Source: Octopus sinensis (Eukaryota). Taken from it: a DNA stretch of 64,000 nt. The notes beneath the pieces are model-generated. The model was not told the DNA's origin and searched no databases. It saw only the letters and a program-made list of their open reading frames with translations. Where the stretch lies: positions 37,448,001 to 37,512,000 of the forward strand of contig NC_043000.1 in NCBI RefSeq assembly GCF_006345805.1. Direction: 5' to 3'. Position 1 is the first letter of the stretch, and each line of letters begins with the position of its first letter. Both the position numbers and the translations under genes were made by a program. This document shows, piece after piece, positions 4,378 through 60,000 of this stretch.

Positions 4378-5815
4378 CCTCCAGGTAGTATCAGAGGAAC
4401 TCAAGGCAGGATTCCCCTAGGAGCTCCTCTATGCTGATGACCTTGCTCTAATAGCCGAGTCACTATCAGAACTAGAGAAGTTTCAGTTATAGAAGCAAGG
4501 TCTAGAATCAAAGGGCCTTAGAGTAAATCTAGCTAAAACCAAAGTCTTAGTAAGTAGGAAGGCAGACAAATCACAAATTCCTTCAGGTAGATGGCCCTGC
4601 TTGATCTGTACAAAAGGTGTAGGTAGAAACTCCATAAGCTTTAGACACATAAGAGGGGCAGTAATATCAAAGGAAGGCTAACTGGGAAGATAGTTTTTGT
4701 GTGTGGCAAATGCACAGGGGCAATAAACACTGAAAATGTGCAGAAAACAGCTTCCATCACATGCCAGGGGAAAAAAACTAAAAGCAAATGATAGCTTCTG
4801 TTTCCTAGGTGACCAAGCTGAGAATGTAGCTTCTAGAATAAATAGCCTGAGCAAAGTTCAGAGAGCTCCTACCTCTGCTGGTAACAAAGGACCTCTTGCT
4901 CAGAATGAAAGGTAGACTGTATGACACATATGTGAACAGCCATGCTACACAACAGTGAAACATGGGCTGTGACTGCTGAGGATGCAAGAAATGAGGCTAG
5001 TATGTTCTGAGGAATGTGTAATGTCAGCGCATATACACGATATGGGTGTAACTGCCCTGAGAGAAAAGTTGGACATAAGAAGCATCAGATGTGGTGTGCA
5101 AGAGAGACAACTGCACTGGTATGGTCATGTATTGAGTATGGATGAGGACAGCTGTATGAAAAAGTATCACACCCTAACAGTGGAGGGAACCTGTAGAAGA
5201 GGTAGACCCAGGAAGACTTGGGATGAGGTGGTGAAGCATAACTTTCGAACACTGGGCATCATGGAGGTAATGACAAGTGACTGAGACCTTTGGAGATATG
5301 CTGTGCTTGAGAAGGCTCAGCAAGCCAAGTGAGACCGTAACTGGGGCTTATGCCAGTGTTGCATAACTGGCCCATTTAAGAGTATGCCTCAATCATTGGG
5401 CAATAAACTATGCTTGAGAAGACCTGTTGAGTCATGTGAAATCATTGTCATGGCTGATGCCACTACTGCTTGACTGGCACCCGTGCCTGTGGCATGTAAA
5501 ACGCACCATTCAAACATGGCCAATGCCAGTACCGCCCAACTGGCTCTCGTGCCAGTGGCATGTAAAAAGTATCATTCGAACGTGGTTGATGCCAGTTCTA
5601 CCCGACTGGCCCTCATGCCAGTGGCATGTAAAAAGCACCCACCACACTCTTGGAGTGGCTGGTGCCAGGAAGAGCATTCAGCTGCAGAAATCCTGCAAGA
5701 TCAGACAAGAGCCTGGTGCAGCCTTCTGGCTTGCCAGTCCCCAGTCAAACTGTCCAACCCATGCCTGCATGGAAAGTGGATGCCAAGCAACGACAATGAT
5801 GATATATATATATGT
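4378..5815 (+). mobile_element. 5'-truncated RTE-clade LINE (RT C-terminus + repetitive 3'UTR)
   Basis: ELLYADDLALIAESLSELEK...GLESKGLRVNLAKTKV; ORF 4982-5284 ...RLHWYGHVL...RGRPRKTWDEVV; ends ccaacccatgcctgcatggaa...(gat)n. Confidence 0.9.
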
Positions 5816-9458: not shown

Positions 9459-9641
9459 AAAGCACGATTGGCTCGTATCCGCATGGCTAAAAACGCGAGC
9501 GGCGCAGCCTTTATCACTAGCAAGAAACGAACTGAGGAGGTCGTACTTGCTAGAGAAAGTGGTCTTGAAGTAGATGACTACAAAGAAGACATATTCGAGT
9601 TACAGCATCATCATCTCTTAACCTGTCTAGAAAAAACTACT
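9459..9641 (+). CDS. Shal: Shal/Kv4 voltage-gated K+ channel, internal coding exon (proximal C-terminus), phase 0-0, 61 codons
   Basis: tttcag|AAA...ACT|gtaagt; translates KARLARIRMAKNASGAAFITSKKRTEEVVLARESGLEVDDYKEDIFELQHHHLLTCLEKTT, matching the Kv4-diagnostic KARLARIR and FELQHHHLLxCLEKTT motifs. Confidence 0.97.
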
Positions 9642-9946: not shown

Positions 9947-9991
<45 letters not shown>

Positions 9992-11307
9992 ATATTTTAA
10001 CAAGTACATTTTTTAATGGTCTCCTATGATATCATATCATTTCCAAAGCATACCAATTGTCTTACAGAATCATTTGAATTTTTTTTTTTTTTCAATGTTT
10101 TACTAATGAATATTCCTTAATAGCACACAGGTAGTATGTCAACACTTCAAATAGAAGGATTCACAATTTGGGTGAGAATCTTGTCTAGTGCAAATTCTAT
10201 ATTTTGTTATTTTCAAAAGTGACAGCTGGTACACATTTATTGTTCTGGTAAGAATTCAAGAACATGTTGAACTATTTGTACTATGTTATTTCATACATCA
10301 GTATCTCACTTATTTGTTTTCTCTTTCACCACTATATATTTAATTAGATAAAATGTCTGAAGATGTTAATGCTTAAACGTGGTTAAATGTAATCATAATT
10401 CCAAATAAACAAATATGAAATGAAAAAAAGCAACAGATGTTTAAGATGTAATGGTGTTAACCTACTGGCTGAGTGGTGGCTGGTGCATTATGATTCCCAG
10501 TAAAGACGCTTAAATTTCAGAAGTCAAATCTAATTAACTATATATAAGTACCATGATAAAGTACATTTCCTTCTGTAAACATTAAGGGAAGAGAAAACAG
10601 AAGATCAAAAAATATCACATGGTCTATTCAAGAGTAGATGGACACTTCCAGTAAAATTATAGGCATGTACTTTAAAGAAGAAAATGATCCTTAATAATGC
10701 AATTCTGTAACTATGCTTTCATAATCAGATGCATGGTCATTTTCCATCACTTTAGAAATCATAGGCTTCATATCTACAAATTACATTGATACCTGTGGTA
10801 GATTTTAAACTCTTACCCACGAGCCTATAGTTCAGTTCAGTTAAAAGACATCTCCCAAGAATATGATAGAAACACTAATTTATGACAGTGTTTACAAACA
10901 GGTGAGAATATCTTGAAGTTGTGATTTTAATTCACAATTTCAGAGAAAAGCTAAATATAAGTGTAAATTTTCTTGCTACCACTTCTATTCATCATGCAGA
11001 ATACTTCCTTCAGTTTTTTTTAAATTTTAATTCTCTTTTATTGAGTCTAAAAATCAGAGTGAGCAAATGTAGATTTTACCTTTAATTGCTTAGCCATATG
11101 GTTACTATGCCACAAAATATAAATATGGACTAGGTGACAGAGTCTACATGTATAAACTTATACCTGTACTGAATAGATATATGAACCCATGGGGGATACA
11201 CAAATTTTATAATCATATATCCTTTGATGTGTCTTTAATGTTTAATGCAAAATCATTTTCATTTTGTCTTTTAAACGTGCATATATTATTGTTGTATCAT
11301 GCTGTAG

Positions 11308-11424
11308 GGTTTAAATATGGTGCTGCCAGAAGAGTTTGGGAAACAAATATTAGGTCCAGAAGCTGTATTGGACTGGCAGGTGTACTCTTATCCTGCAGAA
11401 AGCTCGGTTGAGGAAGAAAAAACG
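11308..11424 (+). CDS. Shal: Candidate Shal alternative cassette exon A (39 aa)
   Basis: gctgtag|GGT...ACG|gtgaga, 117 nt, phase 0-0, no stops: GLNMVLPEEFGKQILGPEAVLDWQVYSYPAESSVEEEKT; paralogous to 24214-24333. Confidence 0.75.
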
Positions 11425-11954
11425 GTGAGAGTAAAGTGGCACCCTAGATAATCTCCAGTTTTAGTTATCCAACATAGAGACACAAACTACTGCACAATGA
11501 AGTTTTAATTACATCAACCTATAGAAACTTGCTTTGTCTGAGAGCATAAATGATCATTGGAAAAAAGCCGCATGGAAAAGAAACATGAAATCATACATAC
11601 AGCCCTTTGCTATGCATACGAATTATATATATATTTGTATATATGTATATACACACATATATATATATTACTTGTGTGTGTATGTGTGTATGTATATACA
11701 CACATAAATATGCATGCATACATACATCATAGATTTACATTCACGTATACACACACATGAACTATGTTATCCTCATCATTTCTATGTCTCCTTTTTCCAT
11801 ACTGGCACGGTTTGGAAGAGAGATACTGAGGTTTGATACTATCTTTCCTTTGTTTTTCAAGGCAGATATTTTTTCTTGTACTGGTCTTCAACAACAATGA
11901 AAACTATTGAGCTATGAGACATAAAAATGTCAATGACAATGTATAGACACCTAG

Positions 11955-12203: not shown

Positions 12204-12259
12204 TCAGTTGAAATATGCTTGTGGAATGTCTGGACTGATAAACAAGCCAGTCACTGTGT

Positions 12260-12731
12260 TTTGTCATGGAGAAACTTTCTCGCTGTTGACAATGGTGTAA
12301 ATACACGTAGATCAGTTTGCAGTAGCCACTTTCCAGACTGTTAGATGCAACATTTTGGAGTAGTTATCTCCTCTTCAGTCACAGACACTGCACAAAGGGT
12401 GATGCGAACTGATGAAAGAGAGTTATTCTCTGATACTATTTCAGTCATTGTACGATGACTGACAGCACTACATATTACTGCTTATTGCTGCTACTTTGTA
12501 ATTTACTTATGGTGAGCTGCTGTGTAGTGTTATCAGTCAATGTACAATGAATGAAATAGTATAAGAGAATCACTCTCATTAGTGTGCCACACCATCTGCC
12601 CAGTGTCTGTGACTGAAGAGGAGATAACTACTCTGAAATACTGCATCTCACAGTCTGGAAAGGGGATGCTGCAAACTGATCTACATGTATTTACACCATT
12701 GTCAACAGCAAGACATTTTCTCCATAACAAA
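12260..12731. mobile_element. Fold-back MITE-like palindromic element
   Basis: ~220-bp diverged inverted arms (tttgtcatggagaaa... / ...tttctccataacaaa) around a ~30-bp spacer. Confidence 0.8.
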
Positions 12732-14530
12732 TCTTAATGAATGGCTTGTTTATCAGTCCAAACATTCCACAAGCATATTTGAACTGGTAATAACATTGCA
12801 TTTATGCATGTCACTGCTTAACGCTCCAATTTCATAATATATACCTATAGATATATATATGCATACATACGGATGGACAGACAGATAGACGAACAGACAG
12901 ACAAATAGACAGATATATATTGAAGATCCAAAAGATCCATTTTCCAATGCATGGGTCACATGGAATTTGTTGTAGATTTTCTACAGTCAGATATCCTTTT
13001 TGTTGCGAACCTTTATCAGTTTTCAAGCAACATAATACTTCCTCAAGATTGGATATGCTTCAAAGAAGATTGCTAATGAAGGACTGTTTTGATGTCTTTG
13101 TATGATGGTGACACTTGTTTACAAGTATCGTGTAATGTCAGGACCAGGAAGCACAAACATATCCTCACACACAGATGTACGATAGGCTTCTTTAAGTTTC
13201 CACTTTCCATATCCTTTCACAAAGCCTAAGGCAGCTGGGTTCTTTAGAAGCAAACACTTGCACAATGTGTTTCCCAGTGTGATAGAATCTGAAACCACAT
13301 AATTGGGAAGTGAACTTCTGAACTATGAAGCCAAGCTTGCACTTTGACCATCCTCTGTTGCTAACATACATTCTAATTATGCAGTGAGGAGGAAAAAGGA
13401 CAATAGCTGAATGACTAATGTTATTTTTAATAATTTCCGCAAGTACAAGAGATGACTAGCTGCAATCAGTTCTTGGCCTGGCCATGAGTGAATAAATTCT
13501 AACTATGGAAACCCTCAAAATGAAGGTGTTGCTTAGGCACATCTTTATTTGTCATTGGCCATCAACTGGACAGGTGTGCTACATATGAAGTGGACATCAG
13601 CTATAGGCCATACTTTATGTTAAGCTATTATTTGCATCATGCTCGCTGAGACAATGCATACACTTCGTTACAAAGCCGTATTGAAATATGACCCTAATGT
13701 CTAGGACATTAACCACACGGAGAAGAAGAGTATTGATGTGAAGAGATAAATCTTGGAGCCTGACACTCTGATATGGAAGATAAACGTCTACAAAAGAATA
13801 TATAAAAGCTTAACAAACAAATAAATGTAAACATAAACTTCATTTATATACACAAGAGTGTGTGTATGATTGTGTGCATGTGTGTGTATGTTGTGTATGT
13901 GTGTGCATGTGTAGCGTATATGCATGTATTTGAATAAGAGATCAATGAAAGAAATATTTATTGTAAAGTTCATGCTGCATGCTCTAGTTATCTCTTATTC
14001 AATCTATAAAAACAACAAATATGTTTAAAAAAATATATACATAATTCAATGTACAATGAGCTCCTGACCAGTTATAAATATACTGGTGGATGGTTGTGAC
14101 AGATAAGTACATATGCCATGTTCTTATATGTATATACATTGATAATAAATTCACAATGCCTCAAAACATCAATATAAACTTAGAAATATACTAATAGAAA
14201 ACACAAAGCAATAAGTTTAAGAACTCACAACAGAATATAGGAAACTAAATATAAAATGTCTAAAAATAGTGCAAAACTGTCTTTTTTAATAAGATATGCA
14301 TTAGTCCCCACATCTTGTACAACACAAACACATGCACTTTATGTGGGTGTGCAGGTGTGTGTGTCTGTGTGTATATGTATATACATGTGCATGTATGTAC
14401 ATACATATATGTACATATAAATATGTGTGTATATGTAAATATAATATATATGCATACACATATATTTTATTTTGTGGTACAAAAACATAAAAGAACTCAA
14501 TACAACATTATGTTGGAAGTTAGTAGAGTC

Positions 14531-14983: not shown

Positions 14984-15246
14984 TTTATATTTAAGAGATG
15001 AGGAATTATGTACATTATTTACATTTGATGGATATTTGTCCTCATCTTGTTTGTTGTTAACACAACATTTCGGCTGATATACCCTCCAGCCTTCATCAGG
15101 TGTCTTGGAGAAATTTTGAACCTGGATTCTCATTCCTAAGGTATTTTTTCGATGTTATTATTATTATTATTCAGGTCACTGCTTGGAATCGAACTCGGAA
15201 TCTTGGGGTTAGTAGCCTGCGCTCTTAGCCACTAAGCCATATGCCC
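14984..15246 (-). mobile_element. tRNA-headed SINE with Penelope-type tail carrying a hammerhead motif
   Basis: Minus strand: A box tggcttagtgg, B box gagttcgattcc, (aat)n, then gacacCTGATGAaggctg..cagccGAAAtgttgtgtt. Confidence 0.8.
15059..15104 (-). ncRNA. Minimal type-I hammerhead ribozyme motif
   Basis: GACAC-CUGAUGA-A-GGCUG(gagggUAUAU)CAGCC-GAAA-U-GUU-GUGUU: stem I GACAC/GUGUU, stem II 5 bp, short stem III. Confidence 0.6.
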
Positions 15247-15247
15247 G

Positions 15248-15447
15248 GGCTACTAACCCCAAGATTCCAAGTTCGATTCCAAGCAGTGACCTGAATAATA
15301 ATAATAAAATTGAAAAATACCTTAGGAATGAGAACCCAGGTTCAAAATTTCCCCAAGACACCTGATGAAGGCTGTGGGGTATATCAGTCAAAATGTGTTA
15401 ACAACAAACAAGATGAGGACAAATATCCATCAAAAGTAAATAATGTA
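15248..15447 (+). mobile_element. Second, 5'-truncated copy of the same SINE, head-to-head with the first
   Basis: Reverse complement of 15011-15217 with scattered substitutions; hammerhead GAAA degenerate (cagtcaaaatg). Confidence 0.85.
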
Positions 15448-16445
15448 TCTAGAACTGAATTCAGAAGATTATCTATTACTGAGAATATTCTATCCCTGCC
15501 TTCCTTTCAAACTGTATTACTTCTGATTTTTTTAATGTAACAAGCTCTGCTCTTTAAATTTGTCTCTCCACATTCTCATCACTACACACATCAGCCTCCT
15601 CGCTTCTTCGATACTTGCACTCCACACCAAACAATATATGCTGCTTCTCATTATAGTCTTTGCCGGTCAATGATACTATTTCACCACAATTACATTAACC
15701 CCCAACCTTCGTATTTAATAAGGCATTGCTATACCAGTTCCCTTGAATACATATGAATACAGAAACACGTATGTGCAAATATTAACACACACGTGTGTGT
15801 GTGTGTCTATTACTGAAGTGGAGCAGCTAGTGTAACCAAAGACTACTTTATAAAATCAGTTAGAACACAAATACAAAGAATATATGAAAGAGAATTAAAA
15901 GAGAGTACTCAGTACTCTTAATTATCTCTCATATCCTTTGTATTTGAATGCACACTGATCATATACAGATATTCTCCATTCAAACCAAGTTTAATCTTCA
16001 AGAATTTAATGTAATTGCACAAACAAAAATCCCCTGCCTCTCTCTATATCTCTTTCCTCTCTCTCTCTCTCTCCCACACACAAACACATACAAGCACTTG
16101 AGTACACACTTACAAATGGGACTACATCAATGTTTAATCAATGAGAAAGGTTAAATTACGTATTTAAGAAACTTCCGTTTAAAAGAATGTAACTATATTT
16201 CATTTCAAATCTATAGAATGAAAATAAAATAATAGAATAAAAAGCAAAAAATGCAATCAGCCAAATAATTAAAATTAATTGTTTTTTTTTAATCCTCAAA
16301 GATTATGAGATTATTTACTTTCTGTTTCTAAAAGCTTTAGATTATATTTGGATTTAATTCAGTTTGAAAATTTAGAGTTGACAAGCAGTTGTAAGCCCTT
16401 ATCTCTCTTCACTGTGTTCCTTGATGTACCTGTCTATCAATTCAG

Positions 16446-16511
16446 GGTTTCTCCACCAGGGGTTCAGATGATTTTACCATTTCTAATCATTTCCAAATGG
16501 CTATATTCCAG
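16446..16511 (+). CDS. Shal: Candidate Shal alternative cassette exon C (22 aa)
   Basis: pyrimidine-rich acceptor ...caattcag|GGT...CAG|gtgagt (consensus donor), 66 nt, phase 0-0: GFSTRGSDDFTISNHFQMAIFQ. Confidence 0.6.
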
Positions 16512-16805
16512 GTGAGTTATCTTATGCAAATAGCTACAGTTGAAAACCAATAAACAAATAAATGAAATGAAAATAGAAAATATATGATAGAAAGGAGAAA
16601 AAAAAAACCCTCTATTTAAACATGACTACAGCACTATATCAATAATGCAATGAATATTTAATACTTAAACAATCCATCCCAACTGGCATATAATGCTTTT
16701 CAAGTACGAATACAGAGAAAGCAATTTTACCTCAAGATAATTACAGACGAAATACTAGCATTTGTATGTACTCACTCACACACACACATGCTCTCTCTCT
16801 TTATA

Positions 16806-17465
16806 TATACAGGGTGTGCTAGGTAACTGGAAACTAAACAAAACAAAAGGAGAAACAAAAACAAACCAACATTCTCCTAGAAAAACAGCATACATCTTCA
16901 ACTAGATACACAAAGAAAGTGACCAATCAACAAAACCAACCTCAGTCCTTATGACAGCTTTGATGCAGTGATTGAAATGACTATGCCAGGATAGCTCACC
17001 TCTCCCCATGCCACTCCTGGCTGGTTCCCTTACTCAATAATACCACAGATATAACAGTCCAGTAGTCAAATCATGAGTGCTAAGAGATAACTTATCACAC
17101 AGATCTCCAGAGTTTTGCTGGACATGAACTGCCCACTTGTCGTCATGTAAGACATCCTCACACACCACATATCTGCTTTGCAATAGTTTGCATTGATATG
17201 CTGGTATAGTTGTTGATGATGTTCTGCACATGCTGGATAAACTCAACCATCTTGACATCTGACCACTGAATAGGTTTCTTTCTCTTGGTCACAGATGGCA
17301 TGTTCTGGCCTGAGGCCTCAAGCTTTTTCCTGACCATTAACTCAAAGAATCCAGCTATGTTCAAGAAGGTGGCAATCCCCAACTAAAGTCACAAACACAA
17401 TACACTTTTTCATCTATATAAGACTGGAATTTGGCATACTGATGCTATTGATACACCCAGGTGTA
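16806..17465 (-). mobile_element. Internally deleted maT/DD37D-like Tc1/mariner element
   Basis: Terminus tacagggtgt at 16806, degenerate acaccc terminus ~17460; minus ORF IATFLNIA...VRKKLEAS...KRKK...SD...EFIQHVQNII...SMQTIAKQ and LLDCYICGIIE. Confidence 0.6.
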
Positions 17466-21020: not shown

Positions 21021-24000
21021 ATAAGGTAGTGATTTACATACATGAGACATCTTTGTCACACTGCATGATGATTCTGCCTTAAGAATACATTAAGGGTATA
21101 TAAGCCTGTGAAATATTAGTCTGCAGACACTGTAATTCATTGAATATGTAATTCTGTTGATCAAACAATTGGAATAACTGTCAAAAACCAATGCAGAATC
21201 CATTCACTATTCTATAATACAATAAAACAAGTGCTAGTTCACTTGCGTCCAGTAAATCACAAGTATTTATTTCATCAACTCTGGATGGATTAAAAGCCGA
21301 GTTAAACTTACTAGAATTTAAACATAGAAATATAAAATCCAAAATCAACACTGACAGGTTGTCAGTAAATCATTATAATTATTAGATTTATATTTTATTT
21401 CAAGTCAAGGATTATATTCTGCTTTAAATTCTTCACTAAAGATGTCAAGTAGTCTTAGAGTTACAACTGGCTGCTGAGTCATTAGGATCTGAAAGATCGA
21501 TGGCTCCTATCCTGTCACTAGTACTAAACCATATTCTTGATAAGAAACATTCAACTATTTCTGGCTTGTTTCTCTTAGCTGTAAATCAATATTATGTGAG
21601 ACTGAGCTCAGTGTTATAACCGAGATGCATTTTATTGGCTTGCAGAGCAAATTTCACATCCACCCATGGGCTCCTGCAGAGGATGTAGATATCAACAGTA
21701 ATCTATTGTCCAACACAGGTCAAACTGCAGTGCCTAACAATTTTCTTTATCCTCAACCTGGTGAATGTCATCTATTAGAGTTTGTTCATCTGTCTTTTAC
21801 AGTACATTCTAGGCAAAAAGTAAAGCCATAAAGTGCTCCTCTACATTACATATCAAATGAACAATAGAAAATATTTTCTAAAATGAAATTTTTACATTAA
21901 AAATTCACTGTATTCTTTTCTTTAGGAATATTTCAGTTTACCAACGTGTAGTTTGTTTCTGAGGTGACATTTTAGGATATCAAATAATAGTGCTGAAAAC
22001 ATTTTAATTTTAATTTATGTTTGGATTTATATAAAGAGACTGAAGATTGACATTATCAATGTCACTGATATCAATAATAGTGTGTTAGCAGAAATTAAAG
22101 ATCACGTGACCAAATGCCTAACATTATTTGATTTGTCACTATACTTTCAGTGTTATTCTCACTGATGCCCAAATAGATTTCCCTCAAAAAATTTGGCATT
22201 GTACACAGGCAAAATTTTTCAATACTGTCACCATTAGTTTAGTGTATTTCCATGCTGGTTTGATATGAATTTGCACTGTAGTGTAGTTTCAACTGTTCAT
22301 ATTCTGCTTTAATGCACATACATTTCTCAACATCGTTAAACTGAATTTAATTTGAGCAAAGCTTTGTTAAACCTTCCTTCTTTCACTTTAACTCAGTCAT
22401 ACGTTAAATAATTTTCAGTATTACCTGAGCACATTTTCACTAATCTCATGATTGAACCTCACATTCTTACTTGTCAACTAACCACAAAACCTTGAAATTT
22501 CTTTCAAATGGGGTTTTAAAAATGGGGTCATATATTACATTTTGAACCATATAATTTTTGAATGAATGCATTATTTAATTGGTTAAATGCATATCATAGG
22601 TGATTATGGTTATCAACATAACTATGAAATATGGCACAATTACCTGTATAAAAAAACTATCAGAAGATACCAACAGAAAAATTTGTACAAATGAAAGTAA
22701 ATAGACGAATAAATAACTTACAAAATGTTGAAAGACTCCAAGTTAAGAAATTCGGATTGTGAACACCAAACAAAATTATGCGAGTAATGGATAAAATGAG
22801 AAAAACAATATGTATTTCTTTTTAATATTATACTTGCTAAAATAACAACAATGCAAAATAGCAAAAATAAATTAACTTTTAGATACTTCAGTTCTGTAAA
22901 TATCATCTCATTTCTCTTTGCCCTATGAGATGAAATTTTTCCTGAGGAGAAATATTTATTTTACATTAAAATCAAAGGAAATGGAATTATAGACATTATA
23001 TACAGAAAAATGTTTAACAATCGAAAACAAGTCACTAATTGGGATATATGCATGCGTATTCTTATGCTCATGCATCTGTAAAGATTTCATATAGCCAATA
23101 CTGGTAAACACGACTTAGCTTTGTGAATAAACATACACACATACATATAGATATATATACATACACACACAAGCACACACATAAAAACACAAAAATGTGT
23201 ATTACTGAGTAATCGGAAGTTATACTCTCCAATCTATAATTGGTGTATTGTTGGCATTAGTCAGGGTATTTGGCTATATAACTGTAAGAGGCAGAGTAGG
23301 GGGAAAAAAAAGAAATTAAATACTTAAAGTAAGCAATAGTATTTACCACAAACATAAAAATCCTTTACTTGAAAGTAAAACCCACAATGGACTGGAAAGT
23401 TTCATGCCAATAGATTAGAGCTGGAGATGAGCCATACATAAACTATTCTGACCCATATACACATGCCAGAAGAGCAAAAACTAAAATTACATTTAAATGC
23501 ATGTGTATCTCTGTATACACAGTAATAAATTCATACATTTATATTCACACACTCTGAGAGTTTAAAAGAAAATAATGAAATGGTATCAAAGGAGACATCA
23601 TTGCTTATCATTATCTCACAAGGGAAATAACCATTATGTACATTAAAATGGAAGTACTCTTTCAACCTATATATTTAAAAACTGTTGCCAAACACCATTT
23701 TTAAATCATAATGTCCATGATTTTTTTATATTCTGAACTAACCAAAAATTCAATCTCAATTTTAATTCTATTGTTTTTATTCTCATATTTACTACAACTT
23801 TCTGTTTTCATTACCCCTCACCCCACTGTAGTCTTCTCCATTTTCCATAATTAGTTATATAAATATTTAACATATTCATTTTACATCACAAACATTTTTA
23901 CTCAGAACTAGTATATTTGAAACAACTGCATCAAACTGAAATTAGGGTTGTTTTCAATTTAAACACATAATCCTTTGCATTTCAATGAAATTTCAATATA

Positions 24001-24213
24001 TACAGTGAGAGAATTATTTCCATCATTACATGGCTGAATTTGAACTACCAAAAATAAATGATTACTAAACATTTATCCCCTTTATACATTACTGAGGTAC
24101 CCTCTAGGGTTATAAGATATCAATCTGCTATTAGTTTCACCCACTTGATCCTATATTTTTTAAATATAAGTTTAAGATTTCAATGTGTCTACTTAGTGTG
24201 CTATATTCTTTAG

Positions 24214-24333
24214 GGGTTGAATTCTACTACACGCTTACCATCAAGTATGGAACAAGAAATGCAGTCAATAGAACGTGTCTTAACATGGAACTATTACAAC
24301 TATACAAGTGAAGAGCCTGCTGAACACAAACCG
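24214..24333 (+). CDS. Shal: Candidate Shal alternative cassette exon B (40 aa), paralog of exon A
   Basis: tattctttag|GGG...CCG|gtgaga, 120 nt, phase 0-0: GLNSTTRLPSSMEQEMQSIERVLTWNYYNYTSEEPAEHKP. Confidence 0.75.
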
Positions 24334-25419
24334 GTGAGAAAAGCATACACGATTGCAGTAAGAGCCTTGGCACTGACACTTCATTCAAATTTATGCTGTT
24401 GAAACAGTCAATTTTCCTTCAATGTTCCTGGCTTACCAATCCTATATTTAGAGTATTACTAATTCCAAGTTCTTGTAGCACTTCGCTTCTAGAAATTACA
24501 TGACTCCAGCATTTCCCTTATCCACTTCCTGTTTGAGTATTTTTGAAAACTCTAAATTGTTGTTGTTTCCGCTAATGTTATTCTGTTTCAGACAAGTATA
24601 TATATATTCATTATGTCTCTTTGCAAAATCTTTCCTTCCACCCACTTTCTCTCATATTGTGCTTTTAAACGAATATATTGCTCAATATAAACAAAACTCA
24701 ATACACACACACACACACACACACATCATATATCTACAATACTTTAATATATTATAACAGAAGCCTGATGAACTGGCATACAGAATAGGATACCAGATTT
24801 CATGATGGGTGATATTTAGATCTATTAAGTTTTCATTTCACAGCTTAGTAGAGTTCAGTTCACCTATCATTCATTGAGGAGATTATAAAATAAATCCTTT
24901 AATGCCTTGAAGTTGATTTAACCCTTTTGTAACCATATTTTTAAAGAAATATACTACCCTCACTTCAATTAGTTTTGAAAATAATGAAGATTTTAGTAAA
25001 AAAAAAACAAAACTTTGTCATTATTAGGCTTAAATCATAAAATTTTGATGGAAGATTTTAATTTTGACCACTTTAAAACATGGAAGTTTTCTCAGAGAAC
25101 TGGTCTCAGGTAGTTGGTATCAAAATGGTTAACTGACCCTATTTCCCGACTTGGTGGCCTAAATATGCACTGTATATTTCTCACTATACTAACATAGACA
25201 TCTATGCTATATTTCAACATATTCCAAATCCCAACAAAGATATTTACAATATTTCTCATGCTATATTCCTTATGAATATCAACAACATCTATCAATAAGC
25301 TGCTACTCATGTATTCATTAAATAAGGATATTTTCAACGATCGTTACTTTTACTTAACATCTTGTACAAGGTTCATGTTAATTTGCAAACAATTCTAGCA
25401 TATTTTAAAAATTAATTCA

Positions 25420-37257: not shown

Positions 37258-37416
37258 GACAGGGAATTTACAGAGATGGATATGACTTTTAGTATACCTC
37301 CTAATAAGCCTTCGGAGACACCTCCACCTTCACCTGATCCATCATTGGCATCTTTAGAGCGAAGGAGGATGACAGGATGCTGTACTTGTAGGTTTTCTCC
37401 ACAACGCCGGTTCCTG
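37258..37416 (+). CDS. Shal: Shal/Kv4 coding exon following KTT, phase 0-0, 53 codons
   Basis: ctttcag|GAC...CTG|gtgagt; DREFTEMDMTFSIPPNKPSETPPPSPDPSLASLERRRMTGCCTCRFSPQRRFL resembles invertebrate Shal DREFxE...P.SP...CC segment; phase compatible with 9459-9641. Confidence 0.92.
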
Positions 37417-54817: not shown

Positions 54818-55029
54818 GATGATATCTATCTATCTGTCTATATATATATATATATATATATATGTACATTTGATTGTGTGTATATATGGATGGATGTGTA
54901 AAACACATGCATACATTATTGTATTATTCACTATCATTTTCTATCGATGATAGAACAATATGGTAATATTACATGTATGGATGGCACCATTAACACTAGT
55001 ATTTATCTGATTTATTTTAGACTCACTTC

Positions 55030-55925
55030 CTAGTCATGTATCTAGAATCAGTTATGATAGAGCAGTATCATGCACACCACATCTGATGCCTCTTATACCC
55101 AACTTTTTTCTCAAGATGTTTACTCTCTGTCGCTGCATAACCAGCAAAGCATACTAGCTTCACTTCTTTCAAGCCTTTGCATGTCCTCAGCAGTCACAGC
55201 CCATGTTTCAGTCATGTAGCATGGCTGTTCACACACAGGCATCATACAATCTACCTTCCACTCTGAGGGAGAGGCCCTTAGTTACCAACAGCAGTAGGAG
55301 CTCTCTGAACTTTGCCCAGCCTCTTCTTATTCTAGCAGCTATGCTCTCAGAACATACATCTCCACTACTGACTTGGCCACCTAGATAACAGAAGCTATCA
55401 ACTACTTCTATCTGTTCCCACCTGGCATTTGATGGAGTCTATTTACTGTACATTTTTAGTATTTATTGTATCTGTGCGCCTTCCACACACAAAAACTATT
55501 TTCCCTCTTAACCTTCCTCTGATCTGTCCATAGCACCTTTTATGTGTCCATAGCTTACACTGTTTACTTCTTATGGAGCTTCTATGCCTTTTCTACAGAT
55601 TGAGCAGGTTCATATACCTGAAGGGGTTTGTGATTTGTCTGCTTTCCTACTTACTAAGACTTTGGTTTTTACAAGATTAAATCTATGGCCCTTTGATTCT
55701 AGACCTTGCTTCCACACCTGATATTTCTTCTCTAGTTCTGGTGGTGATTTGGCTATAAAAGCCAAGTTATCAGTGTAGAGGAGCTCCTGGGAGCACCCCA
55801 ACTTAAATTCCTCTGTTATTGCCTGGTGGATTATGATGAACATGAGAAGGCTGGAGACTGATCCTTGATGAAACCCTACTTGTACCCTGAATTCATCATT
55901 ACACCCATTGCTAATCTTCACTTGA
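55030..55925 (-). mobile_element. RTE-clade LINE RT fragment
   Basis: EFRVQVGFHQGSVSSLLMFII...ELLYTDNLAFIA...GLESKG. Confidence 0.9.
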
Positions 55926-57229
55926 TATATATAACAAATGATGGATAGGTATCAATTCATTACAACTGTTTCCAACAAATTTTTTAATTGATTAATGGGT
56001 GCATTATCTCATTATAAAAAAACGTTATCTTCAGACGAATACATGAACTACATTATTAAGAACATTTTAAAACATTTAAAATCCATGGTATGTGCATATT
56101 TTGTGATTTCATAATCTTTGTTGATCACAGAATGAGATTGCCAAATCAAAACAAATTAAATGGTGGTTTTATAGCAGAGGAGAGCACTGTGTCATATGTG
56201 GGTAGGGTGTATTTAAGATTTATAGTCTTGAAGGTGGTTAGTCAGCATGGTTAGTGGTGGTGGTGGTGGTGGTGGGAGGGGGAATGGACAGCTGGGTGTC
56301 TCCTCACCACAATGAAGAAAGAATGAATCTTATATATATATATATATATAATCTTAGGTTCTTGTAGTGTATAAGTATCCTCATTATTATTTGATTCATG
56401 GGCAATTGTCAGAGTTAGTTTTTATCCTTTCTGTTATTGTTGGTTAACATCATCTAGTGGTCAAATAAATTTTCACACTTCAAACGAAATTTGGTACCAG
56501 TGGCGTGGTTGTACTGACTGACTACTATCTAGATAAGACAATTTGCTATATATGGCCCTACCTAACTTATTAACGTTATCTTCTTCTTCTTCTTCTTCTA
56601 TATCCCCCATCCCACATGATCTCTATGTTACTCATCCGATTACCACACTTTTGTTTACTTTTTATTTCCCCCTGATATAAGCTCCCCCCCCCCCCAAAAA
56701 AAAAAAACAGTGTCAGAAGGCACACAATGTGACAGCACTCCTTTGATGAAAGTCTGAGGAAGTGCCATTCTAATGTTTAAAACTGCAAACATTACATAGA
56801 TTTTCTCTTTGAAATTTTGCATAAACTGGCATTGCAAGCAGAGTTGGTACAAAAACACTTGTAATGAATCATTAAAGATATGTTAAAGAATTTCTTTGTC
56901 TTATTATTTGGATTGTGTGTGTGTGTGTGCACGGTAGCATATACACAAACGTACACAGTTACATGACATATAATATATATTACGTTAAAATTCTTATAAG
57001 CCAATACAATGGGGATTGAAATAAAGGAGTAAAAACTATTGTAACAAAGACAGGACAACAGTTTACACTTTACTTATATGTCAGTATTTTGAGTGCGAAT
57101 ACGATTTTGCCTGAATAATATCTAGGATGGTGTTGAGTTGGTACTTTGTGATATATACACAGGCCTGGCTATGTGGTAAGAAGCTTGCTTCCCAACCACA
57201 TGGTTTCAGGTTCAGTCCCACAGCTACAA

Positions 57230-60000
57230 TTTCCATTTGATTTTCATTTTGATGTTGATGTACTTAACACAATAGGTCTCCTCAAGTACAGCAGGTTGCC
57301 CTACGATCCAAGGTATTTTTGAATGGGCTGGGGCTGGTTATGTGAAACTGGTGTAGGATAAAGCTGTGAACTCACTTTATTTGCTGGGTCTTCGCAGTCA
57401 CAGCATATCTCCAGAGGTCTTGGTCTTTTGTCATTGCCTCTGTGAGGCCCAACGTTCAAGGGTCATGCTTGACCACCTCATCCCATGTCTTCCTACATCT
57501 ACATCTACTCTGGATTCCTTCAACTGTTTGGGAGTGGCGCTTCTTCACACATCCCTCCTCATCCATCCATAGTACATGACCATACCAGTGCAAACGCCTC
57601 TCTTGCATGCCACATCCTTTGCTTCTTATGTCCAACTTTTCTCTCAGGGCGCTTACACTCTGTTGTGTGTGCACACTGACATTACACATCCAGCGGATCA
57701 TGCTAGCTTCATTTCTTTCAAGCCTTCGCATGTCCTCCACAGTCACTGCCCATGTTTCACTACCGTGAAGCATAGCAGGTTGCACATATGCTTCGCACAA
57801 TCTACCTTTCACTCTGAGCGAGAGGCTCTTTGTCACCAGTAGAGGTAGAAGCTTTCTAAAGTTTGCCCAGGCTATTCTTATTCTAGTGGTAACACACTCT
57901 GAGCATCCACCCCAACTATTAACTTGGTCACCTAGGTAGTGGAAGGTATCAACTACTTCTAGTTTCTTCCCCTGGAGTGTGATGGAATCTGTTTTCTGAG
58001 CATCTGTGGTGTTTATTGCTCCTGTGCATCTGCCACACACAGAAGCTATCTTCTTGGTTAATCTTTCTTTGATGTGTCCATAGCTTACACTAGGTACATC
58101 TTATGGAGTTTCTACCTACACCAGGTCTACACATCGAGCAGGGCCACCTACCTGAGTGGGTATGTGATGTGTTCGCCTTCTTACTTACTAGAACTTTGGT
58201 CTTTGCTACATTGATTCTAAGGCCTTTTGATTCTAAACATTGCTTCCACACCCGAAATGTCTTTTTCTAGTTCTGGTAGTGATTCTGCTACGAGGGCCAG
58301 GTCATCAGCATAGAGGAGCTCCCAGGGGCAACCCAGCTTGAATTCCTCTGTTATTGCCTGGAGGACTATGATAAATAAAAGGGGCTGAGGGCTGAACCTT
58401 GGTGGACCCCTACTTCTACCCAGAATTCTTCACTATACTAATTTCCAATCCTAACCTTACTAAGGGCCTCTCTGTATAGGGCCTGTACAGCCCGTATTAA
58501 CCATTTATCAATCCCCAGTTTCTGCATTGCCCACCAGATAAGGGATCAGGGGATCCTGTCAAAGGCTTTATCCAAGTCCACAAAAGCTAAATATAAGGGT
58601 TTATCTTTAGCTAGATATTTCTCCTGCAGTTGTCGAATCAGGAATATGGTATCAGTGGTGCTTCTACCCAGCACATAACCGAACTGCATTTCATCTAAGC
58701 AGACTCTCACCCTATAACCCTCTCCGGGACCTTCATCACCTGATCCAGCAGTTTGATACCCTGTAGTTATTTCTATCTGGAGCATCACCTTTACCCTTGT
58801 AGCAGTTGACTATGGTGCTGCTACGCCAGTCATTGGGTATGACTCCATCATGAATTACCTGGTTTACAATGCGGGTGACTAGGCCAGAGCCCACACCACC
58901 AGATATTTTAAGCATCCTAGCAGTGATTTCTGATGGGCCGGGGGCTTTTCCTGGCTTCATACCCTTAATTTGCTTTATCTACAAGGGAGCTGTCTATTTG
59001 GATAGCTGGTCCTTCTACTGGGTCAAGATTTAGCAGGATCTCCTTCCATTCATTGTCCATGTTCAGCCTTATCAAAATGCCTTATTCAAGCCATTTTCTT
59101 TTCCGAATGATTAAAAGCAAGTGCACCATCATCCATGCGGTCACATTTCTCTCCTGTGACATCACAATTTTCTCTCACACACTGTCTTGTAATCCAAAAT
59201 ACCTCAGTTCTTTGGTTCTCACGTTGCTGGACATTGGCAAACTTCTTTTCTGCTTTGCCCGTGGTTATGTATACCTGCCACCCAGCCTCCTTCTTTTTTG
59301 GATTGGTCTACTTCTTGGTATCCTTCTGGCTTCGAGCCTAAAGTCACTAATAACTAGCCTATGCTGAAGGGTCCATTCTCCATTCAGGAGGGTTTTTGTA
59401 TCTAAGAGCAACCCTGTATCCTGCTGTGTGGTGAGGATGAAATCAATCTGGCTAGCAGAGTCACCTGATTGATAGGTTATCAGGTGGCTGTCTGGTTTCC
59501 TGAAATTAGTGTTGTAGATTAAAAGGTTACATGCATCACAGAACTCCAGTAGCCTAGTTCCCTTGTCATTTCTGGAACCAATACCATGGCCCCCATGTAC
59601 ACCAGTGAAGATACCGGATTGCCACCCAATATGCCCATTAAAATCTGCAGCTGCAAAGATGAGGTCATTACCACTCGTCTTTGAGGTAGCCTGTAGAAGG
59701 GTTTCATAAAAATGGTCCTTCTCATCATTTGGTAGGCCTGCTTGTTGGGTGTAGGCAGAGATAATTGTAGCTGTGCTGTTCTGCAGGACCAGCCTAAGCC
59801 TAAGCACACTGTCACATACTCTGACAACCTCTATGACTTTATCTACCCATTTCTCCGCAAGGGGTATGCCTACACCCCCCATTCCATCTGTGTTACCTTG
59901 CCAGAAGATTTTGTATTTATGTGCCTTGCCTGTGAGGACCCTAGCTGAAGCTCCTCTCTATCTTACCTCATGTATGCATTACACATTGACATGTCTCCTG
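57230..60000 (-). mobile_element. Near-full-length decayed RTE-clade LINE (APE endonuclease + RT)
   Basis: 59265-59882 GGVGI...IISAYT...DFNGHIG...QIDFIL (APE); 58960-57456 GKAPGPS...QFGYV.GRSTTD...FVDLDKAFDRIP...YADD...TWDEVVKHD. Confidence 0.93.

What the first reader, a model, noticed from the sequence alone, without database searches (positions are those of the whole stretch)
16446..16511. Cassette exon C (22 aa) with consensus donor and putative PKC motif
Polypyrimidine acceptor and CAG|GTGAGT donor, phase 0-0, starting GFSTR. S-T-R fits the S/T-x-R/K PKC pattern, echoing the PKC-site-bearing Kv4.3L insert of similar length at the same junction (inference, convergent or homologous).
Basis: partly seen in the sequence, partly recalled or inferred. 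Interest (0 to 1): 0.7.

Follow-up and report, generated by a model that had tools for sequence, protein, structure and literature searches.

The report
Small optional exon in octopus Kv4 gene
The 66-base stretch looks like a genuine optional exon of the octopus Shal/Kv4 potassium-channel gene and is already in a public gene model, but the suggested PKC site and the link to the human Kv4.3L insert are no better than chance.

Summary
The sequence is as described. Positions 16446-16511 form an open 66-nt, phase 0-0 segment encoding GFSTRGSDDFTISNHFQMAIFQ. It has an AG acceptor behind a 48-nt AG-free pyrimidine-rich zone, and the only perfect CAG|GTGAGT donor in the window.

It lies on the + strand in a 27.6-kb intron of an octopus Shal/Kv4 gene, between the exon ending ...HHHLLTCLEKTT (9459-9641) and the exon starting DREFTEMD (37258-37416). 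This is the same junction where human Kv4.3L carries its 19-residue insert.

The exon is already annotated. Octopus sinensis RefSeq protein XP_036358514.1 contains it at 100% identity, between two further cassette exons, A (11308-11424) and D (24214-24333). O. bimaculoides isoform X2 skips all three.

A and D are paralogues of each other. Against a second octopus species they show only synonymous changes. A/D-level checks could not be made for exon C, because no ortholog DNA and no octopus transcript could be obtained.

The S-T-R "PKC motif" occurs in 22-33% of random 22-mers. Exon C shows no detectable similarity to the Kv4.3L insert.

Verdict: probably a real, ordinary alternative exon (about 0.6), already in a database and functionally uncharacterised. 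Interest is low.

The parts
9459..9641 (+). Constitutive Shal/Kv4 exon (KARLARIRMAKN...FELQHHHLLTCLEKTT), 183 nt, phase 0-0, donor ACT|gtaagt
   Evidence: tblastn of P0001/P0002, 98-100% identity. Sequence read. Aligns to human Kv4.2 427-489 and Kv4.3 424-487. Start of Pfam DUF3399.
11308..11424 (+). Cassette exon A, 117 nt, 39 aa (GLNMVLPEEFGKQILGPEAVLDWQVYSYPAESSVEEEKT)
   Evidence: 100% match to P0001 residues 151-189. A second octopus species (L001-L005) has 3 differences in 117 nt, all synonymous, against about 86% identity over the whole aligned intron stretch. A 68%-identical ortholog with intact AG and GT sites exists in a distant species, L006. Paralogous to exon D.
16396..16445 (+). 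3' splice region of exon C: AG-free zone, pyrimidine-rich run, possible branch point ttcAc (A at 16411), acceptor cag
   Evidence: Read directly. Acceptor score 4.6 on my crude scale, against 7.3-8.8 for the constitutive exons and 4.1-5.2 for A and D.
16446..16511 (+). Cassette exon C (the finding), 66 nt, 22 aa GFSTRGSDDFTISNHFQMAIFQ, phase 0-0
   Evidence: 100% match to residues 190-211 of XP_036358514.1. No other copy in the window. GC 0.39 against 0.27-0.28 in the flanks. Predicted disordered, pLDDT 28-41.
16512..16517 (+). Consensus donor GTGAGT of exon C
   Evidence: Only CAGGTGAGT in the window. Donor score 13.3, the highest of the five exons.
24214..24333 (+). Cassette exon D, 120 nt, 40 aa (GLNSTTRLPSSMEQEMQSIERVLTWNYYNYTSEEPAEHKP), paralogue of A
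   Evidence: 100% match to P0001 residues 212-251. L007 from a second octopus species has 2 differences in 120 nt, both synonymous. A-D local alignment score 58, reached by 0 of 2000 shuffles.
37258..37416 (+). Constitutive exon DREFTEMDMTF...CCTCRFSPQRRFL, 159 nt, phase 0-0
   Evidence: 100% match to P0001 and P0002. Donor CTG|gtgagt. Continuation of Pfam DUF3399 in P0002.

Best explanation
Positions 16446-16511 are a frame-preserving alternative (cassette) exon of an octopus Shal/Kv4 (KCND-type) A-type potassium-channel gene. It sits with two other optional exons, A and D, in the 27.6-kb intron between the ...CLEKTT exon and the DREF... exon.

When included, it inserts 22 residues into the cytoplasmic C-terminal tail. 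The insertion point is immediately after the conserved proximal helix (EDIFELQHHHLLTCLEKTT) and in the middle of the Pfam DUF3399 region. This is about 40 residues upstream of the conserved CC motif.

Shown here:
- the exon anatomy;
- the junction;
- inclusion in a RefSeq model;
- skipping in another octopus isoform.

Inferred:
- that the exon is really spliced in;
- that, by analogy with Kv4.3L, the extra disordered segment alters regulation of the channel (KChIP-type auxiliary subunit effects, or phosphorylation/palmitoylation of the tail) rather than the pore.

A PKC role for S3 is possible but carries no evidential weight.
For: Gene identity and junction.

Exon anatomy: open frame, symmetric phase, AG-free zone, and the only perfect donor in the window.

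Exon-likeness beyond chance: the only candidate at its score level on either strand, with a Markov expectation of 0.005 per intron. At looser thresholds the + strand of the whole window yields only A, C, D and the DREF exon (the DREF exon with two alternative acceptors).

Public model: XP_036358514.1 (O. sinensis) contains E1-A-C-D-DREF with C at 100% identity.

Track record of the model: the other two cassette exons in that same model are independently validated. They show only synonymous changes (3 and 2) against about 86-88% overall contig identity in a second species.

Skipping: O. bimaculoides isoform X2 joins CLEKTT directly to DREF.

Hot spot: the junction is a recurrent alternative-splicing site across bilaterians. 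There are inserts in Mytilus (14 aa) and Owenia (23 aa), and DREF-exon skipping in Haliotis, Mytilus and ticks.

Functional analogy: the Kv4.3L insert changes KChIP2b/KCNE effects, carries PKC site T504, and lowers palmitoylation of C546/547 (PMC5296356; PMC5585193 abstract; bioRxiv 10.64898/2026.07.03.735752).

Structure: AlphaFold2 predicts the helix ending at the junction and no structure for exon C.
Against: No read-level or assembled-transcript evidence for exon C was found. Three word-indexed protein searches covering lengths 38-889 aa, plus one exhaustive representative search, found the exon C peptide only in XP_036358514.1.

That model has an aberrant 35-residue N-terminus, so part of it may be ab initio.

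A and D are paralogues and might be mutually exclusive. If so, a transcript carrying A+C+D together would be artificial.

No ortholog of exon C from another species could be retrieved, so selection on it is untested.

Its acceptor is weaker than those of the constitutive exons.

All transcript-derived cephalopod Shal proteins in the collection (20 of 589 aa, decapodiform type) skip the whole region.
Confidence: 0.6

Rival explanations
1. Pseudo-exon. This would be an intronic segment that resembles an exon by chance. It would have been put into XP_036358514.1 by the ab initio part of the annotation pipeline and be rarely or never included in mRNA.
For: The model's N-terminus (MICLKTKSLLLVFVFCTSSKVKPLKSELQLADGIL) does not match Shal, so the model is not fully evidence-based. 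An ab initio predictor would pick exactly the three best-scoring phase-0 candidates, which is what my own scan returns. No transcript containing exon C was found. The exon is short, so an open frame is cheap: 42 codons stop-to-stop.
Against: A perfect donor, an AG-free zone and a symmetric open frame together are expected about 0.005 times per intron. The two sibling exons from the same model are demonstrably under purifying selection. GC rises in the exon as in the real exons.
Confidence: 0.3
2. Exon C is the ancient homologue of the vertebrate Kv4.3L 19-residue exon, inherited from the bilaterian ancestor together with its PKC site.
For: Same phase-0 junction after CLEKTT. Similar length (22 against 19 aa). 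Both begin G-[LF]-S and both contain a DD pair and an [ST]x[RK] motif (listing).
Against: Local alignment score 13 with shuffle p = 0.41. A leading Gly is expected from the AG|G acceptor preference. Inserts at this junction in Mytilus and Owenia are unrelated to each other and to exon C (p 0.39-0.99). Kv4.1 and Kv4.2 lack the exon (PMC5296356). The motif positions differ (S3 against S12/T17).
Confidence: 0.03
3. Exon C is a real exon whose main role is to add a PKC phosphorylation site (S3 in GFSTR) that controls inactivation, as proposed by the first reader.
For: The S-T-R pattern is present. Precedent exists in Kv4.3L T504 (abstract of PMC5585193).
Against: The pattern is found in 22-33% of random 22-mers, and 15 times in the 630-residue octopus Shal itself. 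The only basic residue near S3 is R at +2. Nothing about phosphorylation was or could be tested here.
Confidence: 0.08

Closest known systems
Human/rodent Kv4.3L (KCND3 long isoform) 19-residue cassette exon, residues 488-506
   Same: Same gene family. Exactly the same phase-0 junction after ...HHHLLHCLEKTT. Similar size, optional inclusion, and location in a disordered tail just after the proximal C-terminal helix.
   Different: No detectable sequence similarity. The octopus intron carries three optional exons rather than one. The function of the octopus insert is untested. The PKC site of Kv4.3L (T504) is experimentally supported, while the octopus S-T-R is only a pattern match.
Annotated model XP_036358514.1, 'potassium voltage-gated channel subfamily D member 1' [Octopus sinensis]
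   Same: Contains exon C, exon A and exon D at 100% amino-acid identity to the window, in the same order.
   Different: It is a computed model with a non-Shal N-terminus. It shows one combination (A+C+D) and says nothing about how often or where the exon is used.
Alternative C-terminal exons of invertebrate Shal genes (database isoforms of Mytilus, Haliotis, Owenia, ticks; lobster Panulirus Shal 1.f/1.g)
   Same: The C-terminal tail after CLEKTT is a recurrent site of alternative splicing. Mytilus X2/X6 insert 14 aa and Owenia inserts 23 aa at the same junction. Haliotis X3, Mytilus X3/X8 and tick isoforms skip the DREF exon.
   Different: The inserted sequences are unrelated to exon C. The lobster 1.f/1.g difference lies one junction further downstream, after ...KSYQ. 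From my own knowledge, lobster shal splicing was described by Baro and colleagues in 2001; this was not checked here.

Membership tests
Shal/Kv4 (KCND) potassium-channel gene | Encodes the conserved post-S6 segment KARLARIR...HHHLL.CLEKTT and the DREF... segment (Pfam DUF3399) | tested here: met
   Window exons 9459-9641 and 37258-37416 match octopus Shal proteins at 98-100% and human Kv4.2/Kv4.3 chains at E about 1e-11. DUF3399 is hit in P0001 and P0002. The pore and S1-S6 exons are outside the window.
Cassette (skipped/included) exon | Functional-looking 3' and 5' splice sites and a frame-preserving open reading frame | tested here: met
   cag|G acceptor, 48-nt AG-free zone, CAG|GTGAGT donor, 66 nt, phase 0-0, no stop.
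Cassette (skipped/included) exon | Present in at least one transcript and absent from another transcript of the same gene | tested here: inconclusive
   Included in the O. sinensis model XP_036358514.1. Skipped in O. bimaculoides isoform X2 and in all decapodiform transcript-derived proteins. These come from different species and are models or assemblies. No reads were available.
Cassette (skipped/included) exon | Conservation of the exon and its splice sites in related species | not testable with these tools
   Ortholog contigs were recovered only for exons A and D. The exon C frame is too short to have been called as a gene on genomic contigs. Exact look-ups of neighbouring window ORFs found nothing.
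Kv4.3L-type insert (homologous exon) | Insertion at the junction after CLEKTT | tested here: met
Kv4.3L-type insert (homologous exon) | Sequence similarity to GLSYLVDDPLLSVRTSTIK beyond chance | tested here: not met
   Local BLOSUM62 score 13, shuffle p = 0.41.
PKC phosphorylation site | Consensus [ST]-x-[RK] | tested here: met
   S3-T4-R5 is present, but the pattern occurs in 22-33% of random 22-mers, so meeting it carries almost no information.
PKC phosphorylation site | Actual phosphorylation by PKC with a functional effect | not testable with these tools
   Needs biochemistry and electrophysiology.

The most novel reading that the evidence does not exclude
Octopods may have built a three-exon alternative module at the ancient CLEKTT|DREF junction of Shal. 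It would consist of a duplicated, possibly mutually exclusive pair (A/D) plus the unrelated 22-residue exon C. Combinatorial use would give several C-terminal linker variants that tune KChIP-type subunit effects, phosphorylation or palmitoylation of the tail. This would be an independent, richer parallel to the single Kv4.3L insert of vertebrates.
Probability: 0.25. Interest if true: 0.45.

Novelty: already known. Interest (0 to 1): 0.22.

Why it matters
If exon C is used, it is one more way for octopus neurons to diversify A-type potassium current. It would act at the same spot in the channel tail where the human heart and brain isoform Kv4.3L differs from Kv4.3S. That would support the idea that this junction is a general regulatory hot spot of Kv4 channels.

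In itself it is an ordinary optional exon that a public annotation already contains. It opens no long-standing question. The more informative by-product is the conserved paralogous exon pair A/D around it.

Tried and rejected
1. I looked for pore and S4 motifs to place the gene. None lies in the window, so only the C-terminal exons are present.

The downstream exons were located only after fetching octopus proteins.

3. I tried to fetch the genomic locus of the O. sinensis model. The gene range is 116.5 kb, so no DNA was returned. O. bimaculoides X2 and cuttlefish KCND2 are not on record for contig look-up.

4. I searched for transcripts or short ORFs containing exon C in three length ranges and in the 1.8-billion representative library. 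Only genomic ORFs of exons A, D and E1 were found, and none of exon C.

5. Cluster members of the transcript-derived proteins are all 589 aa without cassettes, apart from one 328-aa fragment cut off at its contig end.

6. Exact look-ups of window ORFs (the exon A ORF and two ORFs flanking exon C), meant to obtain same- or sister-species contigs, found nothing on record.

7. I tested whether exon C lies in a repeat or has a paralogue in the window. It does not.

8. I tested homology of exon C to A, D, the Kv4.3L insert and the Owenia and Mytilus inserts. This was rejected.

9. Pfam scan of the three cassette peptides gave no family. A sub-threshold BRCA-2_helical hit to exon A is taken as chance.

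10. I looked for intronic inverted repeats that could act as docking or selector pairs for A/D. Only transposon-like foldbacks and microsatellites turned up, and I did not pursue this.

11. Literature searches for octopus Shal splicing and for the run accessions found nothing relevant.

12. The AlphaFold2 model of P0001 has low overall confidence (mean pLDDT 53). I use it only to say that exon C is not predicted to be structured.

Full report
**Observation.**
The window is AT-rich eukaryotic DNA (about 34% GC), full of TA/CA microsatellites and retrotransposon fragments.

At 16446-16511 the + strand reads cag|GGTTTCTCCACCAGG...GCTATATTCCAG|gtgagt. This is 66 nt, 22 codons with no stop, encoding GFSTRGSDDFTISNHFQMAIFQ.

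The nine-base donor CAGGTGAGT occurs once in the 64 kb, here. Shuffles expect 0.40 on both strands.

Upstream there is no AG between 16396 and 16443. A pyrimidine-rich run and a ttcAc branch-point-like motif lie 35 nt before the acceptor (read).

**Gene context.**
An exon at 9459-9641 encodes KARLARIRMAKNASGAAF...FELQHHHLLTCLEKTT. This is the post-S6 segment of Shal/Kv4 channels.

A protein search anchored on this exon plus the candidate exon returned octopus, mollusc and arthropod Shal proteins. The best hit, P0001, is XP_036358514.1 of Octopus sinensis. Its sequence reads ...CLEKTT | GLNMV...EEEKT | GFSTRGSDDFTISNHFQMAIFQ | GLNSTT...AEHKP | DREFTEMD....

Mapping it back onto the window gives five + strand exons, all phase 0-0 and all at about 100% identity:

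| Exon | Coordinates |
|---|---|
| E1 | 9459-9641 |
| A | 11308-11424 |
| C | 16446-16511 |
| D | 24214-24333 |
| DREF exon | 37258-37416 |

The window is thus the C-terminal part of the Shal gene of O. sinensis or a very close relative. The pore exons and the last exon lie outside it.

O. bimaculoides isoform X2 (P0002, XP_052822834.1) joins CLEKTT directly to DREF. So do twenty transcript-derived 589-residue proteins. The latter are of decapodiform type, identical over this region to cuttlefish KCND2.

**Is exon C more than chance?**
I scored donors with a rough consensus matrix and acceptors by pyrimidine content, and required an open phase-0 frame of 45-210 nt.

- At exon C's own score level it is the only candidate in the whole window on either strand.
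- First-order Markov simulations of the 27.6-kb intron give 0.005 candidates.
- At looser thresholds the + strand of the window yields exactly A, C, D and the DREF exon (the DREF exon with two alternative acceptors), and the - strand yields two candidates.

The thresholds were chosen after the fact and the matrices are my own approximations, so this argues for exon-likeness without proving use.

The exon is a local GC rise (0.39 against 0.27-0.28 in the flanks), like the other exons. About a quarter of intronic 66-nt windows are nearly as GC-rich (26% reach GC 0.41 or more).

It is not part of a repeat and has no second copy in the window.

**Independent evidence from the sibling exons.**
An exhaustive search of 1.8 billion representative proteins with A+C+D found three short ORFs called on genomic contigs.

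Their contigs were fetched. L001-L005 and L007 are collinear with window 9964-11621 and 23727-24713, at 86% and 88% nucleotide identity. They therefore come from another octopus species.

- Exon A differs at 3 of 117 positions, all synonymous.
- Exon D differs at 2 of 120 positions, both synonymous.
- Flanking intron identity (first 100 nt on either side, and further out) ranges from about 95% next to exon D down to 64%, against 97-98% in the exons.
- A more distant species (L006) keeps a 39-codon ortholog of A at 68% amino-acid identity, with cag|GGT and CCG|gtgagc sites. Its intron does not align.

A and D are also paralogues of each other (GLN..LP....VL.W..Y.Y; score 58, reached by 0 of 2000 shuffles; tblastn E about 1e-3).

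So two of the three optional exons in the O. sinensis model are real and under purifying selection. That raises the prior for the third.

**What could not be shown for exon C.**
The peptide of exon C was found only in XP_036358514.1. This holds across proteins of 38-889 residues and across representatives of any length.

On genomic contigs the exon C frame is only 42 codons stop-to-stop, with a late ATG. The gene caller behind the collection would therefore not have recorded it.

The caller is selective. It called the exon A and D ORFs but ignored longer random ORFs on the same contigs. Neighbouring ORFs were therefore not a route to the ortholog. Exact look-ups of window ORFs found nothing.

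The O. sinensis locus itself is too long to be returned.

No octopus transcript covering this junction is in the collection, so the absence of exon C from assembled transcripts says little.

The model that contains exon C has a 35-residue N-terminus unrelated to Shal, so part of it may be ab initio. If A and D are mutually exclusive, as duplicated exons often are (general knowledge, not tested), the A+C+D combination may not exist as one mRNA.

**The interpretation.**
The junction claim holds. Human Kv4.3 aligns KARLARIR...CLEKTT to residues 424-487, and the Kv4.3L-specific exon encodes residues 488-506 (PMC5296356).

The homology suggestion does not hold. Exon C against GLSYLVDDPLLSVRTSTIK scores 13 (p = 0.41). 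Exon C is equally unrelated to the Mytilus and Owenia inserts at this junction.

The PKC motif is uninformative. [ST]x[RK] appears in 33% of random 22-mers of Shal composition, in 22% of shuffles of the peptide itself, and 15 times in the 630-residue channel.

**Likely mechanism.**
Inclusion would place 22 residues directly after the proximal C-terminal helix. It would split the Pfam DUF3399 match, which is contiguous (residues 466-531) in the skipping isoform and cut off at the junction in P0001.

AlphaFold2, run with a 45-sequence alignment, predicts the following:
- helices up to residue 149 (pLDDT 74-88);
- no structure and pLDDT 28-41 over exon C;
- a possible helix within exon D.

The model is of low overall confidence.

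For Kv4.3L, the insert at this position has three reported effects:
- it weakens KChIP2b augmentation and slows inactivation (PMC5296356);
- it carries PKC site T504 (PMC5585193);
- it lowers palmitoylation of the downstream CC motif (bioRxiv 10.64898/2026.07.03.735752).

The octopus DREF exon keeps a CC motif (TGCCTCRF). By analogy, exon C most likely tunes regulation of the tail. This step is inference only.

**Comparison and novelty.**
The junction after CLEKTT is an alternative-splicing hot spot in many phyla. Exon C is one more unrelated insert there.

It is already present in a public RefSeq model. No paper in the searchable library describes octopus Shal splicing.

I rate it as already known at the annotation level, probably real (about 0.6), functionally uncharacterised, and of low interest. 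The conserved A/D exon pair is the more notable feature of the locus.

Noticed in passing
window 11308-11424 and 24214-24333; L001-L007: Cassette exons A and D are paralogues (score 58, reached by 0 of 2000 shuffles). Both show only synonymous differences against a second octopus species. A has a 68%-identical ortholog in a distant species whose intron does not align. They may be a tandem-duplicated, possibly mutually exclusive exon pair in the Shal C-terminal tail.
   Followed up: partly
proteins P0003-P0009, P0124-P0137 (decapodiform Shal transcripts, not the window): Twenty transcript-derived 589-residue Shal proteins differ at only 7 columns (R/G, I/V, S/G, N/S, E/G, T/A, S/G). All 7 are explainable by a single A-to-G change. 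This fits the A-to-I RNA recoding known in cephalopods. It was not checked at nucleotide level.
   Followed up: partly
protein P0001 (XP_036358514.1), residues 1-35: The O. sinensis model starts with MICLKTKSLLLVFVFCTSSKVKPLKSELQLADGIL, which has no Shal counterpart. It then enters the channel at YGDMVP, so the model is truncated or chimeric at its 5' end. Its gene range is 116.5 kb.
   Followed up: no
proteins (Haliotis, Mytilus, Gigantopelta, ticks, Owenia): The CLEKTT| junction is alternatively spliced in many invertebrates. The DREF exon is skipped in Haliotis X3, Mytilus X3/X8 and tick isoforms. There is a 14-aa insert in Mytilus X2/X6 and a 23-aa insert in Owenia. Several short database 'proteins' simply read through the donor into the intron (V... 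after CLEKTT).
   Followed up: partly
window 55000-60000 (- strand) and 4500-5300 (+ strand): Degenerate non-LTR retrotransposon copies are present. The endonuclease domain (PF14529) lies at 59268-59957, with reverse-transcriptase fragments (PF00078) at 58549-58809 and 55613-55951.
   Followed up: partly
window 12205-12786 and 15011-15447: Large foldback inverted repeats lie inside the Shal intron (217-nt arms at 86% complementarity; nested 54-107-nt arms at 85-98%). They are probably transposon-derived and could form long double-stranded RNA in the pre-mRNA.
   Followed up: no
window 17158-17337 (- strand): A 59-codon ORF about 650 nt downstream of exon C looks to me like a transposase helix-turn-helix remnant, but it has no Pfam hit.
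   Followed up: partly
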